DNA of 64,000 bases from Anolis carolinensis (GCF_035594765.1 NW_026943818.1:29966532-30030531); one strand, 5' to 3'; shown: positions 15,706 to 21,700, counted from the stretch's first letter. Translations and numbers: made by a program. The notes: generated from the sequence alone by a model not told the origin.

Positions 15706-18700
15706 TCATTTCCTGAGAGTGGAGTTGGCCCAGGCGGGGAAGGTGTCCAGGTGGAACATGGCCCGGCCCCAGCTGTTGATGGCCAGCATGGTGCAGAGCA
15801 CGCCGATGACGTTCATCATGATCCCAGTTTTCGCCTGGAGGAGAAGGAGAGAGAGGAGAAGGAGAATTTGACCCCAAGGAGGAGGAGGAGAGAAATAAAA
15901 GAAGGGAAAGTGGAAGGAGAATGTGATGTCTCAGGGACCTTTGGACCATGACCCCGCAGCCATCATAGATCAAACTGAAGAGGATTTGGGCTTTCTTCCA
16001 TCTCAGCAAGATCCCGTTCCTTTCCAGATGTCTCCTGTTGACATTTTCATGCCAGAGCCAATTAGAAACGCCCTTGAAACAGAGCCTGTTTCTCCGGAAG
16101 GCTTGGTGTTTGATAGGAAGGCCTTTCTCAAAACACATCGCTCCTAAAAGCAGGTTTTAAGGAGAAGCGCGAGATTAGCGGAGAGAGGCGATTGTGACTA
16201 AACCGTTTCCCTTGGGAAGTTTCGGGGAGGCAGGCATCTGGTACGATGGTGAAACAGCTCCGTTCTCTGGGAAGATTTGGGGAGTCAAACACCTGCTTGG
16301 GGGGAGCTCTTGAATTTCCATAAAAGTTCTGCACTGAGCTTTCCCTATCGCGGTGTCAACCTGACTATTGGTTGAAGAATATTGTCTCTTGTTCCCGAGC
16401 TTCCAAGCGGCCCTCCGGTGCGCTTACTCACGAGTAGACCGGGAGTTGCGTCCCACTCCTTGCCAAGTTTGGACTGCGTTTCAGATCCACCCAGAAATAC
16501 CTTGCCTAGCCTTGAATCCTTGTTCTGGACTTTACTTCAAGAATCTCCCAGTGAAACCTTGCTCTTTCCCCACTTAAACTTCCAAGGAGTTTGAGTGTGT
16601 TTCGGTTATTTGGATTATAGACTTTGGACTCTAATACTGAACATATAACTTCATTTTATTGGACTAATTTTGATCTTCTCTAAAAGGTCAGCTGCTGGAC
16701 TATATACTCTGCTTATTTTTGTTTAGAACTTTTATTGCTTTAATAAAGATATTAGATTGTTTGTTGGCCTCCGTGTTGGTTTCCAGTGTTCGTGCTGCTT
16801 AGGGGTGTTACAGAGAAGTCCAGAAGGAGAAGGGGTTGACTCCAAGGAGGAGAAGGAGGAGAGAAATAAAAGAAGGACAAGGGGAAGGAGAAGTCGAGAA
16901 GGAGAAGGGTTTGACACCAAGGAGGAGGAGAGAAGGAGAAGGAAGAGCAACAGCAATGTTTGGCCCCAAGGAGGAGGAGGAGGAAAGCAGGAAGGAGAAG
17001 TCAAGAAGGAGAGGAGAAGAAGAAGTGTTTGACAACGAGGAGGAGGAGAGAAGGAAAAGAACGAGGACAAATAGGAGGAGTATTGGACCACAAGGCGGAG
17101 AAGGAGCAGGAGGGAAAGAAGGAGAGGAAGGCATGATTGACCCCCAAGGAGGAGGAAGAGGAGAGAAAGAAAAGAAGGAAAGGGAGAAGGAGAAGGATTT
17201 GACTCCAAGGAGGAGGAGAGAAGGAGAAGGAACTTTCCATGCAGTGTTTTGTTGTTCCAGCTGTCAGCTCTAGTTTGTAGTGCGGTTTTCTTGTACTGAT
17301 GCTTTGTCTGCTGTGCTTTGAGGAGTTTCTGATTTTTGGCTTCAATCAAAGCAGGTTCTTTGCTTGACATATTCTGCCAGGGTATATTCTTCTTCTTTGA
17401 CTGCTTGTTTGACTTGTAAGAGTCCTCTGCCCCCTGATCTTCTAGGCAGATAGAGCCGGTCAACATCACTGCGAGGGTGCAGTGAATGATGGATGGTCAT
17501 GAGTTTTCTTGTTTTTCTGTCCAAACTTATTATTATTATTTGACCCCAAGAAGGAGGAGGAAAGCGGGAAGGAGAAGTCAAGAAGGAGAGGAGGAGAAGA
17601 AGTGTTTGGCAACGAGGAGAAGGAGAAGAACGAGGAGAAATAGGAGCACAAGGCGGAGAAGGAGCAGGAGGGAAAGAAGGAGAGGAAGGAGTGTTTGACC
17701 CCAAAGATGAGGAGGGTCCCCCATGGTAAGGGACCCTGTCCTACCATGTCGGCGACGCGGAGGTGTCCGTAGGAGAAGACGATGGCGTTGGGCGGCGTGG
17801 CCACGGGGAGCATGAAGGCGAAGGAGGTGCTCAGGGTGCAGGGGAGCATCACGTAGAGCGGGTTCACCCCGATGGACTTGGACTGGGCGGGGAGAGAGCG
17901 GGGGGACGGATGAAGGACGGCACCCCCAAAACGCCCCCACTGACCCCCGCCGGACGAGGCCTCACCAGGGACGCAAAGACCGGGAGGAAGAGGGTGGCGG
18001 TGGCCACGTTGCTGGCGCATTCGGTGAAGATGGCGATGATGGTGGAGAGGATGACGGCGATGGCCCACGGGGCGACACCCTTCAGCGGGGTCATCTGGCT
18101 CCCCAGCCACCTGGACAGTCCGGACGCCTGGCAGAAGGAAACAAGACGGGGCCTGGAAGCGGAGCTATTTCGGAGTTCAGTGAATGGTGGAGATGACTTT
18201 CGAACTGGAAACAGGACCTCTACACTCTCTAGCACTGTTGCCGGATCTGAATTTTCAGACCATCTATCTCGAAGGCTTTCATGGCCGGGATCACAGGGTT
18301 GTTGTATGTCTTTCGGGCTGTCTGGCCATGTTCCAGAAGTATTCTCTCCTGACATTTCGCCCACATCTACGGCAGGCATCCTCAGAGGTTGTGAGGAATA
18401 TATGTCCATGTTCCAGAAGTATTCTCTCCTGACGTTTCGCCCACATCTGTGGCAGGCATCCTCAGAGGTTGTGAGGAATATATCTCCATGTTCCAGAAGT
18501 ATTCTCTCCTGACGTTTCGCCCACATCTATGGCAGGCCTGCTCAGAGGTTGTGAGGAATGTATCTCCATGTTCCAGAAGTATTCTCTCCTGACGTTTCGC
18601 CCACATCTATGGCAGGCCTCCTCAGAGGTTGTGAGGAATGTATCTCCATGTGCCAGAAGTATTCTCTCCTGACGTTTCGCCCACATCTATGGCAGGCCTC

Positions 18701-21700
18701 CTCAGAGGTTGTGAGGAATATATCTCCATGTTCCAGAAGTATTCTCTCCTGACGTTTCACCCACATCTGTGGCAGGCATCCTCAAGAGGTTGTGAAGAAT
18801 ATATCTCCATGTTCCAGAAGTATTCTCTCCTGACGTTTCACCCACGTCTATGGCTGGCGTCCTCAGAGGTTGTGAGGAATGTATCTCCATGTTCCAGAAG
18901 TATTCTCTCCTGACGTTTCACCCACGTCTATGGCTGGCGTCCTCAGAGGTTGTGAGGAATATATCTCCATGTTCCAGAAGTATTCTCTCCTGACGTTTCA
19001 CCCACATCTATGGCTGGCATCCTCAGAGGTTGTGAGGAATGTATCTCCATGTTCCAGAAGTATTCTCTCCTGACGTTTCACCCACGTCTATGGCTGGCAT
19101 CCTCAGAGGTTGTGAGGAATGTATCTCCATGTTCCAGAAGTATTCTCTCCTGACGTTTCACCCACATCTATGGCAGGCATCCTCAGAGGTTGTGAGGAAT
19201 GTATCTCCATGTTCCAGAAGTATTCTCTCCTGACGTTTCGCCCACATCTATGGCAGGCATCCTCAGAGGTTGTGAGGAATATATCTCCATGTTCCAGAAG
19301 TACAACAACCCTGATTAACTGCAACATTCACACTGGCTTCCAACTGACAAAGGACTCTTGTCACACCCTGGACTCTCCACAGATATATATTTACCTTCCT
19401 TACCTAGTCTCTCCATGCCTCACAACCTCTGAGGATGCCTGCCATAGATGTGGGCGAAACGTCAGGAGAGAATACTTCTGGAACATGGAGATATATTCCT
19501 CACAACCTCTGAGGATGCCTGCCATAGATGTGGGCGAAACGTCAGGAGAGAATGCTTCTGGAACATGGCCAGACAGCCCGAAAGACATACAACAATTCTG
19601 ACAAAGGACTCTTGTCACACCCTGGACTCTCCACAGATATATATTTACCTTCCCTGCCTAGTCTCTCCATGCCTCACAACCTCTGAGGATGCCTGCCACA
19701 GATGTGGGCGAAACGTCAGGAGAGAATACTTCTGGAACATGGAGATATATTCCTCACAACCTCTGAGGATGCCTGCCATAGATGTGGGCGAAACGTCAGG
19801 AGAGAATACTCCTGGAACATGGCCAGACAGCCCGAAAGACATACAACAACCCTGATCTATCTCAGCTTTCCAGGCCTTTATCCGGAGTTGTTAAGCAACT
19901 TGTAGGTGAAAGGCCATCTCCGCCATTCCCACCAAAAGGCTCCGTGAGACGGAATTACAGAGAAAATTACACAAAACAGAAATTCACGGTCAAATTAGAA
20001 AGCGTTTCGTTGAGAATTCAGATCAGGCAACGATCCCAAGTCCCGTTTCCAGCTTATGTTTTGTTGGAATTTGTGGTCTCTCTGGATACGTGTTCATGTT
20101 TTGATTCTCGTTTTGACCCATGGGGAAGACCGAACTGACCGTGTGAGACGGGCACTGTTCCTACCTCGCTCCCGTTGGCCAGAGCGAAGCCGCCTCCCAA
20201 CAGCAGCACGATGCTCCAAGGCAGTTTCTGCTGGACCACGTTCCAATCCAGCAACGGGGCCAAGGGCTGGGCCTTCTTCGGGGCTGCGGGAAAGAGAATC
20301 GCTTTCATTGTCACCACGCTGTTGCAGCTTGGATTCCACAAATATCCCTATTGTCAAGCCCCATAGCCTGTGTTACTCTCCTTGTTGATCCATCTTCGAT
20401 GGTTCGGAAACTTGCCTTCGTCTTCTTCTCCCAGTTCAGAGCTACCGCAGCGGGGACGGGTCGACGGGATGATGAAGAGCAGGATGGCCACGGAAATGGC
20501 CACGGTGCCGTCCGTCACGTACCTGCAAGAGCAAGTGAGCCCTGAGGCCACGTCTCGCAACATCTCCCCCCTCGAAGCCGTGAGCTACGAAACAAGACCC
20601 GAGGCTGTGCTATGAACTCTCTGCAAACTGTGTGACCAAGACTCTGCAGTTGTGTTTTTGCATCGGAACCAATGCTAAACAAGATCCGAGGCTGTGCTAC
20701 AAACTCTCTGCAAACTGTGTGACCAAGACTCTGCAGTTGTGTTTTTGCATCGGAACCAATGCTAAACAAGACCCGAGGCTGTGCTACAAACTCTCTGCAA
20801 ACTGTGTGACCAAGACTCTGCAGTTGTGTTTTTGCTAAACAAGATCAGAGATTGTGATATGAACTCTCTGCAAACGGTGTGACCAAGACCCTGCAGTTGT
20901 GTTTTTGCATCAGAAGCAATACTAAACAAGATCCGAGATTGTGATATGAACTCTCTGCTAACAGTAACCAATAGACATGTTCAAAAAATCGTTTTGAATC
21001 GTATATCGGAATTATTTCGGATTGTTCTCGCTTTTTGATACGCATTCCGAGACATTGTCTCACAGCGCAACCAGCAATGTAATTTGAACCATTGTTGGCC
21101 CATTCTCTAATTGTCTCTTAATGTTTCGTTAATTTCCCCCCCCCCCCCAATTTTTTAAAAAATATGTTTTAAAAAATATTTTTAAAAAATTTCATTTCTT
21201 CAACCTACCTTGAATGGGAGCTTAGCGCAGCCTAACATGGCTGCCGCTCCCCAGCCAATCAGAAGCTTCCACGATGGACACAAAGGTGGGGGCTAACGTC
21301 CTCTGCGTCCACATGGAAGATTGCCATGCTAGCCCGGTGTGTAGCGATTGCGCATGCGCTATTTTAGAAACATTTAGAATCATTACAAATTTTCGGAAAT
21401 ATCCGAAATTTTTGGGTGAAAAAAATCGGAAATACTTTCTATATCGAAGCGCCAGCGCCCCCTACTTTAGAAACGAGAATTGAAATTTTTTTTCATCCAT
21501 CGGACATGCCTAGCAACCAAGACTCTGCAATGTTTCGGGGATGAGAACGAACGGCTCGCCTCGGAAAGGCACTCACTCGTTCTCCTTGTTGAAGAGGACG
21601 GTGGCCCATCCGGGGACGAAGCCCGGGTCCCGGGTGAACCAGAGCAGGACCAGGAGGATGAAGGAGCCCAGGACGCTGCCCTCTGCGAAGGAGACCGGGC

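What the first reader, a model, noticed from the sequence alone, without database searches (positions are those of the whole stretch)
18330..19300. Twelve tandem hammerhead-ribozyme units in sense orientation inside SLC13A5 intron 9
Seen: an 80-bp unit is repeated 12 times. On the minus (SLC13A5 sense) strand each reads CCT CUGAGGA U GCCUGC cauagau GUGGGC GAAAC GUC AGG, giving stem I CCU/AGG, a 6-bp stem II, the catalytic core and a GUC cleavage triplet. Stem III is only the palindromic ACGU. About four units keep the full consensus; others have a G-U stem II closure or core changes. Known: Penelope-like elements carry such minimal hammerheads, which cleave as dimers, and tandem hammerhead repeats (retrozymes) yield monomeric or circular RNAs. 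Inference: the tandem arrangement supplies dimer partners in cis, so the pre-mRNA could self-cleave and release about 80-nt units, affecting splicing or expression.
Basis: partly seen in the sequence, partly recalled or inferred. Interest (0 to 1): 0.78.

Follow-up and report, generated by a model that had tools for sequence, protein, structure and literature searches.

The report
Penelope retrotransposon hammerhead repeats in intron
The twelve hammerhead-ribozyme units are real, but they are amplified end-pieces of one insertion of Poseidon_Ac, a well-known lizard jumping gene whose ribozyme is already published; nothing indicates that they cut the host gene's RNA.

Summary
An 80-bp unit is repeated 12.2 times at 18326-19302. 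Each unit carries, on the gene-sense minus strand, a minimal type-I hammerhead: CUGAGGA, one bulged base, a 6-bp stem II, GAAA, palindromic ACGU and GUC.

The motif is the published hammerhead of Poseidon_Ac (PAc), the Penelope-like retrotransposon of the green anole. The AUG of the PAc ORF is A9-U-G10.1, and the cut site lies 26 nt after it, as published. The last unit plus its flank matches the PAc consensus at 107 of 111 positions.

The array is one arm of a single composite insertion (18269-19854) flanked by a 7-bp target duplication, ATCTATC. The other arm holds two inverted partial copies with four more hammerheads. The arms end at about +111 and +86, next to the two published reverse-transcription start regions.

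- Only 4 of 12 units keep the full consensus. One unit has the published killing change G8C.
- Changes are not rarer in the motif than outside it, and none is compensatory.
- The published PAc hammerhead cuts only with PAc protein, and no RNA-seq reads end at its site.
- The inverted arms are predicted to lock units 1-2 and 11-12 in long double-stranded RNA.

The scan has found this kind of array before on other DNA of this genome. RNA reads could not be examined. Verdict: ordinary.

The parts
18269..19854 (.). One composite, 5'-truncated Poseidon-type (Penelope-like) insertion of 1586 bp, with two arms head-to-head and their 3' ends pointing outward. It makes up 78% of the 2037-bp intron.
   Evidence: It is bounded by identical 7-bp direct repeats. 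The ends match Poseidon_Ac at about +111 and +86, compared by eye with the consensus shown. The layout matches the published PLE insertion pattern.
18262..18268 (+). Left copy of the target-site duplication ATCTATC
19855..19861 (+). Right copy of the target-site duplication ATCTATC
18269..18293 (-). 'Tail' of the left arm, Poseidon_Ac ORF positions +87 to +111. It ends at the edge of the published reverse-transcription start site (111-118).
   Evidence: Searches compared with the consensus; RT start sites from PMC11167929.
18294..18325 (-). Poseidon_Ac ORF positions +55 to +86 following the last unit. It is not part of the 80-bp repeat.
   Evidence: the same 32-mer ends all three arms
18326..19302 (-). 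12.2 tandem 80-bp units (M1 at the high-coordinate end, M12 at the low end). Each unit consists of 9 nt (AGATAYATT), the last 17 nt of the pseudo-LTR, and ORF +1 to +54.
19232..19266 (-). Hammerhead core of unit M1, full consensus
18671..18705 (-). Hammerhead core of unit M8, intact, bulged base G
18591..18625 (-). Hammerhead core of unit M9, intact, bulged base G. It is adjacent to M8, and the two are the only intact neighbouring pair outside the predicted dsRNA.
18431..18465 (-). Hammerhead core of unit M11, intact (loop II change only)
18511..18545 (-). Hammerhead core of unit M10 with G8 changed to C, the change published as abolishing PAc hammerhead activity
18751..19186 (-). Cores of units M2-M7. 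All have G10.1-U11.1 (a CpG-to-TpG change). M3-M6 also have an A.G mismatch in stem II. M7 has C3 to U and a 1-nt insertion.
18351..18385 (-). Core of unit M12 with C15.2 changed to U (CpG transition), which weakens the palindromic stem III
19303..19315 (+). 13-nt remnant matching the 3' end (+74 to +86) of a further plus-strand partial copy, joined to the 5' end of the minus-strand arm
   Evidence: one search compared by eye
19316..19600 (+). Plus-strand partial copy 1: diverged pseudo-LTR end, two 80-bp units (cores 19429-19463 and 19509-19543), and ORF up to +86. It is antisense to the host gene.
19598..19854 (+). Plus-strand partial copy 2, overlapping copy 1 by 3 nt (CTG): shorter pseudo-LTR end, two units (cores 19683-19717 and 19763-19797), and ORF up to +86
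20165..20283 (-). Upstream exon of the SLC13-family host gene (...[29 protein letters not shown]), with a GT donor at 20164-20163
17966..18127 (-). Downstream exon ([12 protein letters not shown]...). The AG acceptor is at 18129-18128. The low-coordinate end is approximate.

Best explanation
The locus is one composite, dead, 5'-truncated insertion of a Poseidon-type Penelope-like retrotransposon, closely related to Poseidon_Ac (PAc) of the green anole. It landed in an intron of an SLC13-family transporter gene. As published for this class, cDNA synthesis began inside the start of the element's ORF on both cut DNA ends. This gave two arms that face each other head-to-head. One arm ends at about +111, so it carries the 'tail'. 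The other ends at +86. A 7-bp target duplication lies outside both arms. The template already carried an 80-bp duplication of the pseudo-LTR/ORF junction, because both arms share the same unit junction. This junction contains the element's minimal hammerhead, in which the ORF's AUG forms A9, the bulged U and G10.1. In the minus-strand arm this unit was later amplified stepwise at the DNA level to 12 copies, by slippage or unequal exchange. It has since drifted neutrally. The hammerheads are therefore passenger copies of the transposon's own ribozyme, not a host device. In the pre-mRNA they are most likely inert or nearly so. Shown here: the anatomy, the identity with PAc, the target duplication, the decay pattern and the predicted folds. 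Inferred: the order of events and the lack of cleavage in vivo.
For: Identity with PAc was judged by eye against the Repbase Poseidon_Ac consensus printed. The unit's first 17 nt equal the last 17 nt of the pseudo-LTR. M12 plus its flank matches ORF +1 to +111 at 107 of 111 positions. [quoted passage not shown]

The arm ends are at about +111 and +86. The paper places the RT starts at 111-118, and the tail at roughly 85-119.

A perfect 7-bp direct repeat, ATCTATC, lies at both outer borders.

The layout is partial tandems plus an inverted 5'-truncated copy plus a tail at one end only. This is the layout described for PLEs. PAc protein cleaves and extends both DNA strands in vitro.

The same AGATAYATT unit junction is found in both arms.

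Variants are shared by blocks of neighbouring units: M3-M6, M5-M6, M8-M10 and M2-M7. Adjacent units are 96.9% identical and non-adjacent units 95.2%.

The 41-nt motif carries 9 variant states and 1 indel, against 4 variant states in the other 39 nt. The C11.1-to-U and C15.2-to-U changes are CpG transitions. No change is compensatory.

The published PAc hammerhead is inactive without PAc protein, G8C kills it, and no RNA-seq reads end at its site.

The double-hammerhead fold lies 19.6-29.3 kcal/mol above the MFE.

The intron MFE pairs 19854-19672 with 18294-18476 and 19568-19418 with 19127-19277. The inverted arms are 93-97% complementary over 150-186 nt.
Against: Lack of cleavage in vivo is therefore inferred from the literature on the element family, not measured for this locus. 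The published test used a single-motif RNA. Tandem units, which could form the dimeric fold without protein, were not tested there. Four units, including the adjacent pair M8-M9, still have every conserved position. Nearest-neighbour energies ignore tertiary contacts and co-transcriptional folding. The pseudo-LTR leader of the plus-strand copies is only roughly 75-80% like the consensus, so the source was a related subfamily. I could not search the genome for other copies of the 80-bp junction.
Confidence: 0.85

Rival explanations
1. The tandem array supplies dimer partners in cis, so the SLC13 pre-mRNA cleaves itself after GUC. This would release 80-nt units and lower or alter expression or splicing of the host gene.
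For: Every unit keeps the GUC site and stem I. Four cores are fully intact, and M8 and M9 are neighbours. Minimal Penelope-type hammerheads are thought to act as dimers, and dimeric or trimeric constructs of a Schistosoma motif cut weakly in vitro. The array is sense to the gene.
Against: The same ribozyme needed PAc protein in vitro and left no read ends in vivo. Eight of 12 cores are damaged and the motif is not conserved relative to the rest of the unit. The active fold is 20-29 kcal/mol above the MFE. Upstream antisense copies can sequester M1-2 and M11-12. In Xenopus, eight of nine tested dimer elements of this kind gave no cleavage product. The insertion carries hammerheads on both strands, so sense orientation is not a designed feature.
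Confidence: 0.07
2. The array is a copy of an autonomous-looking 'non-LTR retrozyme' family. Such a family would have an 80-nt hammerhead RNA that is cut out, circularised and reverse-transcribed by rolling circle into tandem DNA, and mobilised by Poseidon.
For: The units are head-to-tail, each with a type-I hammerhead. The same unit junction occurs in both arms, so the template RNA already had at least two units. A 2026 preprint derives vertebrate non-LTR retrozymes from PLE pseudo-LTRs and reports consensus lengths from 51 bp upward.
Against: Each arm continues beyond the units into ORF +55 to +86 or +111 and begins with pseudo-LTR sequence, so the inserted RNA was an ordinary PLE junction transcript. 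The 80-nt unit lacks ORF +55 to +172, which the published assay needs for reverse transcription. Block-wise shared variants fit stepwise DNA-level growth. Other arrays noted in this genome have different unit lengths (155, 169 and 210 bp), which suggests each arose locally (unchecked notes). Described retrozymes are about 170-400 nt with canonical hammerheads.
Confidence: 0.05
3. The relevant RNA feature is not the ribozyme but the inverted arms. The intron would fold into two long duplexes of about 150-185 bp, which could be edited by ADAR or diced. Any effect on the host transcript would come from that.
For: The arms are 93-97% complementary over 150-186 nt, and some lie only 134 nt apart. 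The MFE of the whole intron is dominated by these two duplexes.
Against: This is a prediction only, with no RNA data. Such intronic inverted repeats are common and usually harmless. It does not explain the origin of the array, and it is compatible with the best explanation.
Confidence: 0.1
4. The copy number (12) or the inverted layout is partly an assembly artefact.
For: Tandem/inverted PLE insertions are said to cause frequent problems in shotgun assemblies. No reads could be laid on the locus.
Against: The units differ by ordered, block-wise variants. The arms have distinct ends (+111 and +86). The whole unit is framed by a perfect target duplication, and there is no N run within the intron. 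A collapse or mis-join would not be expected to give this pattern.
Confidence: 0.08

Closest known systems
Poseidon_Ac (PAc) Penelope-like element of Anolis carolinensis and its hammerhead (Frangieh et al., Mob DNA 2024, PMC11167929; Repbase consensus by Arkhipova 2006)
   Same: The hammerhead sequence is the same. [quoted passage not shown] The match is 107/111 over ORF +1 to +111 and 17/17 over the pseudo-LTR end. The insertion ends lie at about +86 and +111, beside the two published RT start regions, and the tail is at one end.
   Different: This copy has no RT/EN coding body, only the first 111 nt of the ORF. The junction piece is duplicated (2 units) or amplified (12 units) with an extra 9-nt joint. 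The upstream pseudo-LTR part is only roughly 75-80% like the consensus, so the source was a related subfamily.
Minimal hammerheads of metazoan Penelope-like elements (min-HHR; Cervera and De la Pena, Mol Biol Evol 2014, PMC4209133)
   Same: Type-I order, no stem III hairpin, palindromic 15.2-16.2, one unpaired base between A9 and G10.1, G10.1-C11.1, a long helix II and a short helix I. They are predicted to act only as dimers and have low activity in vitro.
   Different: Helix I is only 3 bp here, against the usual 4-5 bp (2 bp in the Drosophila virilis variant). Twelve copies lie at 80-nt spacing, rather than one per pseudo-LTR.
Non-LTR retrozymes of animals (Cervera and De la Pena, NAR 2020, PMC7229834; Li, Clavereau and Pollet, bioRxiv 2026)
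   Same: Head-to-tail repeats, each with a type-I hammerhead, derived from or related to PLE pseudo-LTRs. They occur in reptiles.
   Different: The described elements are about 170-400 nt, with canonical hammerheads that have loop-loop contacts, and are shown to give linear and circular RNAs. Here the unit is 80 bp, the motif is the minimal PLE form, the array is embedded in a normal PLE insertion with its own target duplication, and no RNA evidence exists.
[quoted passage not shown]
   Same: Sense-strand hammerhead inside an intron of a protein-coding gene.
   Different: Those are single, canonical, deeply conserved motifs with Rfam models. The Rfam scan finds nothing of the sort here, and this array is a decaying transposon piece.

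Membership tests
PLE minimal hammerhead (min-HHR) | CUGANGA, GAAA and UH boxes in type-I order | tested here: met
   All boxes are present in 10 of 12 minus-strand units and 4 of 4 plus-strand units. M7 (C3 to U) and M10 (G8 to C) fail.
PLE minimal hammerhead (min-HHR) | One unpaired nucleotide between A9 and G10.1 | tested here: met
   U in most units, C in M5-M6, G in M8-M10. The feature is listed in PMC4209133.
PLE minimal hammerhead (min-HHR) | G10.1-C11.1 closing pair and a long helix II (6-8 bp) | tested here: met
   The helix is 6 bp including two G.U pairs. G-C is kept in M1, M8-M12 and all plus-strand units, and is G-U in M2-M7.
PLE minimal hammerhead (min-HHR) | No stem III hairpin; palindromic 15.2-16.2 that allows a dimeric stem III | tested here: met
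   ACGU in 15 of 16 units, AUGU in M12.
PLE minimal hammerhead (min-HHR) | Short helix I (4-5 bp typical) | tested here: inconclusive
   Only CCU/AGG (3 bp) is contiguous, and it is invariant in all units. The published D. virilis variant has 2 bp.
PLE minimal hammerhead (min-HHR) | Self-cleavage after H17 | not testable with these tools
   The same sequence cut only with PAc protein in PMC11167929. It was not tested for this locus or for tandem units.
Poseidon_Ac-type PLE insertion | Sequence match to the element at the pseudo-LTR/ORF junction | tested here: met
   17/17 and 107/111, compared by eye between and the consensus. No alignment tool was used, because the consensus has no session reference.
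Poseidon_Ac-type PLE insertion | 3' ends at the internal RT start sites (about +85 and +111-118); tail at one end | tested here: met
   The arms end at +86 (twice, plus a remnant) and at about +111 (paper).
Poseidon_Ac-type PLE insertion | 5' truncation, partial tandem and an adjacent inverted copy | tested here: met
   description in PMC8557442
Poseidon_Ac-type PLE insertion | RT plus GIY-YIG endonuclease ORF | tested here: not met
   Only ORF +1 to +111 is present, so this is a truncated, non-autonomous remnant of the family and not a full element.
Non-LTR retrozyme | Tandem head-to-tail units, each with a type-I hammerhead | tested here: met
Non-LTR retrozyme | Unit of about 170-400 nt with a canonical hammerhead (loop 1-loop 2 contacts) | tested here: not met
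   The unit is 80 bp and the motif is minimal. The 2026 preprint allows 51-972 bp.
Non-LTR retrozyme | Unit-length linear and circular RNAs; a dispersed family of arrays | not testable with these tools
Rfam hammerhead families (types I and III, HH9, HH10, II) | Covariance-model match | tested here: not met
   No hammerhead hit at E up to 10, either on 4 kb or on a 181-nt dimer.

The most novel reading that the evidence does not exclude
A Poseidon subfamily duplicated its own 80-nt junction so that two minimal hammerheads sit side by side and can form the dimeric active fold in cis without the element's protein. In this 12-unit sense array, the intact neighbours (M8-M9) would then cut the SLC13 pre-mRNA, or shed 80-nt linear or circular RNAs. 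That would make this the smallest hammerhead-bearing repeat unit with activity in a vertebrate gene.
Probability: 0.06. Interest if true: 0.6.

Novelty: new member of a known kind. Interest (0 to 1): 0.17.

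Why it matters
It matters little beyond annotation. The locus is a clear in-genome footprint of what was shown in vitro for PAc in 2024. Both DNA ends were primed. One arm starts at about +111 and the other at +86. The tail is at one end only, and a 7-bp target duplication surrounds the whole. It also shows that Penelope junction pieces carrying the hammerhead can be amplified locally into retrozyme-like arrays. 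Such arrays should therefore not be read as ribozyme devices of the host gene without RNA evidence. If the tandem units did cut without protein, the array would be a convenient natural test-bed for dimeric minimal hammerheads and for the effect of intronic self-cleavage on a transporter gene.

Tried and rejected
- Rfam scans with permissive thresholds gave no hammerhead hit, only chance-level miRNA and sRNA matches. This does not count against the motif, because the models require a stem III hairpin.
- Covariation on the 16 units was uninformative. The units are 96% alike and there is no change on both sides of any pair.
- I looked for similarity between the outer flanks, as a test for a larger palindrome or a host transposon. 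Only a 21-nt match at 90% was found, and the flanks are unique in the window. The idea was dropped.
- The search of earlier findings by sequence was blank.
- A first descriptor and shuffle script timed out. It was rerun with block shuffles.
- The Poseidon_Ac consensus was seen only in a paper supplement and has no session reference.
- The large protein searches were not used. The gene family was settled with Pfam and the PDB sequence search.
- Chance resemblance was rejected: 0.0025 descriptor hits per shuffled window, together with identity to a published ribozyme.

Full report
**Observation.** Tandem Repeats Finder reports an 80-bp unit repeated 12.2 times at 18326-19302 with 96% matches. 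One unit is 81 bp. Read on the minus strand, every unit has the order CCU, CUGAGGA, one extra base, GCCUGC, a 7-nt loop, GUGGGC, GAAA, CGU, C, AGG. This is a type-I hammerhead with the following parts:
- a 3-bp stem I;
- a 6-bp stem II containing two G.U pairs;
- a bulged base between A9 and G10.1;
- no stem III hairpin, only the palindrome ACGU;
- a GUC cleavage triplet.

A pattern for the conserved boxes hits 12 times on the minus strand and 4 times on the plus strand (19429-19797), against 0.16 expected. A fuller descriptor of my own required the boxes, stem II of at least 4 bp, stem I of at least 3 bp and a palindromic stem III. It passes 5 of 12 minus-strand units and all 4 plus-strand units. 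It gives 0.0025 hits per composition-shuffled window, with 5 of 2000 shuffles giving any hit. M1, M8, M9 and M11 are intact. M2-M7 have G10.1-U11.1. M3-M6 add an A.G mismatch in stem II. M7 has C3 to U and a 1-nt insertion. M10 has G8 to C. M12 has C15.2 to U. Rfam's hammerhead models find nothing even at E up to 10, as expected for a motif that lacks a stem III hairpin.

**Host gene.** Open frames on the minus strand carry exons of an SLC13-type transporter. The exon ending at 20165 matches Pfam Na_sulph_symp positions 307-339. The exon starting at 18127 matches positions 340-397. The intron is therefore 18128-20164, with GT and AG at its ends. The best solved-structure match of two exons is human SLC13A5/NaCT, a little ahead of SLC13A2. 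The downstream exon aligns from NaCT residue 425. The number 'intron 9' and the paralogue assignment were not verified further.

**What the unit is.** Notes from earlier work in this scan called this genome the green anole and mentioned Penelope-like elements. I treated this as a lead and searched the literature. Cervera and De la Pena (2014, PMC4209133) define the 'min-HHR' of metazoan Penelope-like elements. It has no helix III, a palindromic 15.2-16.2, a long helix II, a short helix I, an unpaired base between 9 and 10.1, and a conserved G10.1-C11.1. It is expected to work only as a dimer and is weakly active in vitro. The motif here has all of these features.

Frangieh et al. (2024, PMC11167929) studied Poseidon_Ac (PAc) of Anolis carolinensis. 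[quoted passage not shown] In the unit here, A9, the bulged U and G10.1 spell AUG, and GUC ends exactly 26 nt later. The paper's supplement prints the Repbase consensus. The first 17 nt of the unit equal the last 17 nt of the pseudo-LTR. The last unit plus its flank matches ORF +1 to +111 at 107 of 111 positions. The 80-bp unit is thus a 9-nt joint (AGATAYATT), the pseudo-LTR end, and ORF +1 to +54.

**The array is one arm of a single insertion.**
- After the last minus-strand unit, the sequence continues with PAc +55 to about +111 and then stops matching (18269).
- The plus-strand side holds a 13-nt remnant (19303-19315) and two partial copies (19316-19600 and 19598-19854).
- Each partial copy has a diverged pseudo-LTR end and two 80-bp units, and each ends at PAc +86.
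- The paper places the reverse-transcription starts 111-118 nt into the ORF. Its supplement places the roughly 34-nt 'tail' at about 85-119. The two arms therefore end beside the two published start regions, and the tail is present at one end only.
- Immediately outside both ends lies the same 7-mer, ATCTATC, at 18262-18268 and 19855-19861. This is a target-site duplication that frames the whole 1586-bp unit.

Craig et al. (2021, PMC8557442) describe exactly this layout for Penelope-like elements. Insertions are strongly 5'-truncated and form partial tandems. An inverted 5'-truncated copy often lies adjacent. A 30-40-bp tail is often present at only one end. PAc protein cuts and extends both DNA strands in vitro, which explains two arms with their tails pointing outward. 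The insertion makes up 78% of the intron.

**How the 12 copies arose.** The same unit joint occurs in both arms. The template RNA therefore already had at least two units. Within the minus-strand arm, variants are shared by runs of neighbours: stem II U to A in M3-M6, AUG to ACG in M5-M6, AUG to AGG in M8-M10, and C11.1 to U in M2-M7. Adjacent units are more alike (96.9%) than non-adjacent ones (95.2%). This is the signature of stepwise local duplication at the DNA level after mutations had occurred. It is not the signature of one burst from an identical template. This step is an inference.

**Is the ribozyme kept or used?** The evidence points to no.
- The 41-nt motif carries 9 variant states and an indel. 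The other 39 nt of the unit carry 4.
- Two of the damaging changes are ordinary CpG transitions.
- No pair shows a compensatory change.
- M10 carries G8C, the change that abolishes PAc hammerhead activity in the published assay.
- In that assay the wild-type motif did not cut without PAc protein, and the authors call it protein-assisted. They found no RNA-seq reads beginning or ending at the hammerhead site.
- In a 2026 preprint on vertebrate retrozymes, eight of nine Xenopus dimer elements gave no cleavage product in vitro.
- In nearest-neighbour folding, a single unit prefers a rod in which CUGA pairs with UCAG across the cut site.
- The nested double-hammerhead fold of two neighbouring units lies 19.6-29.3 kcal/mol above the minimum.
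- The antisense copies lie upstream in the pre-mRNA. The predicted fold of the whole intron pairs 19854-19672 with 18294-18476 and 19568-19418 with 19127-19277. The arms are 93-97% complementary. This would lock M1-2 and M11-12, including two of the four intact units, in long duplexes.

**What remains open.** The tandem arrangement could in principle give the dimeric fold that a single PAc motif cannot form, and M8-M9 are intact neighbours outside the predicted duplexes. This was not tested in the published work and cannot be tested here. I did not try to get around that, so no reads were laid on the locus. The unit count of 12 also rests on the assembly alone. The ordered variants, the distinct arm ends and the target duplication argue that the structure is real.

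**Comparison and verdict.** By sequence, the motif is a member of the published PAc/Poseidon minimal hammerheads. The locus is a typical truncated Penelope-like insertion. The array resembles a non-LTR retrozyme only in being tandem. It fails the size and canonical-motif criteria of the 2020 definition. It is embedded in an ordinary PLE insertion, and the unit lacks the ORF region that PAc needs for reverse transcription. Notes from this scan report the same kind of array elsewhere in this genome, with unit lengths of 155, 169 and 210 bp, all judged ordinary. Those notes are unchecked, but they agree with what I found independently. The finding is a real, correctly described feature of a known kind. 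The proposed effect on the host transcript is unsupported and unlikely.

Noticed in passing
window 18269-19854: Within one insertion event the two arms use different 3' ends, about +111 on one DNA end and +86 on the other. The joints between the plus-strand partial copies share 3-4 nt (CTG/CTGA), which looks like template switching at microhomology.
   Followed up: partly
window 18326-19302 and 19418-19822: In a two-unit element the first unit's AUG opens a 25-codon frame that stops at the UGA of the next hammerhead core. The junction duplication would therefore place a short upstream ORF before the real start codon of any full-length source element.
   Followed up: no
window 23414-24948: A 35-bp unit repeated about 46 times (87% matches) lies in another intron of the same SLC13 gene, between the exons near 23213-23410 and 25460-25621.
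   Followed up: no
window 20590-20962: Tandem repeats of 87, 73 and 160 bp lie just upstream of the exon near 20400-20560, in the next intron of the same gene.
   Followed up: no
window 33701-33880 and 39152-39331: Identical short tandem-repeat signatures lie 5451 bp apart, as expected for the two LTRs of one LTR retrotransposon. Another note of the scan covers 34090-34384.
   Followed up: no
window 42778-43772: A 142-bp satellite-like repeat of 7 copies at 97% matches. It is already noted by the scan as an LTR-end/primer-binding-site satellite.
   Followed up: no
window about 12100-12230, 26570-26700 and 28380-28530: Runs of N (assembly gaps or masked stretches). None is near the finding, and they were left untouched.
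   Followed up: no
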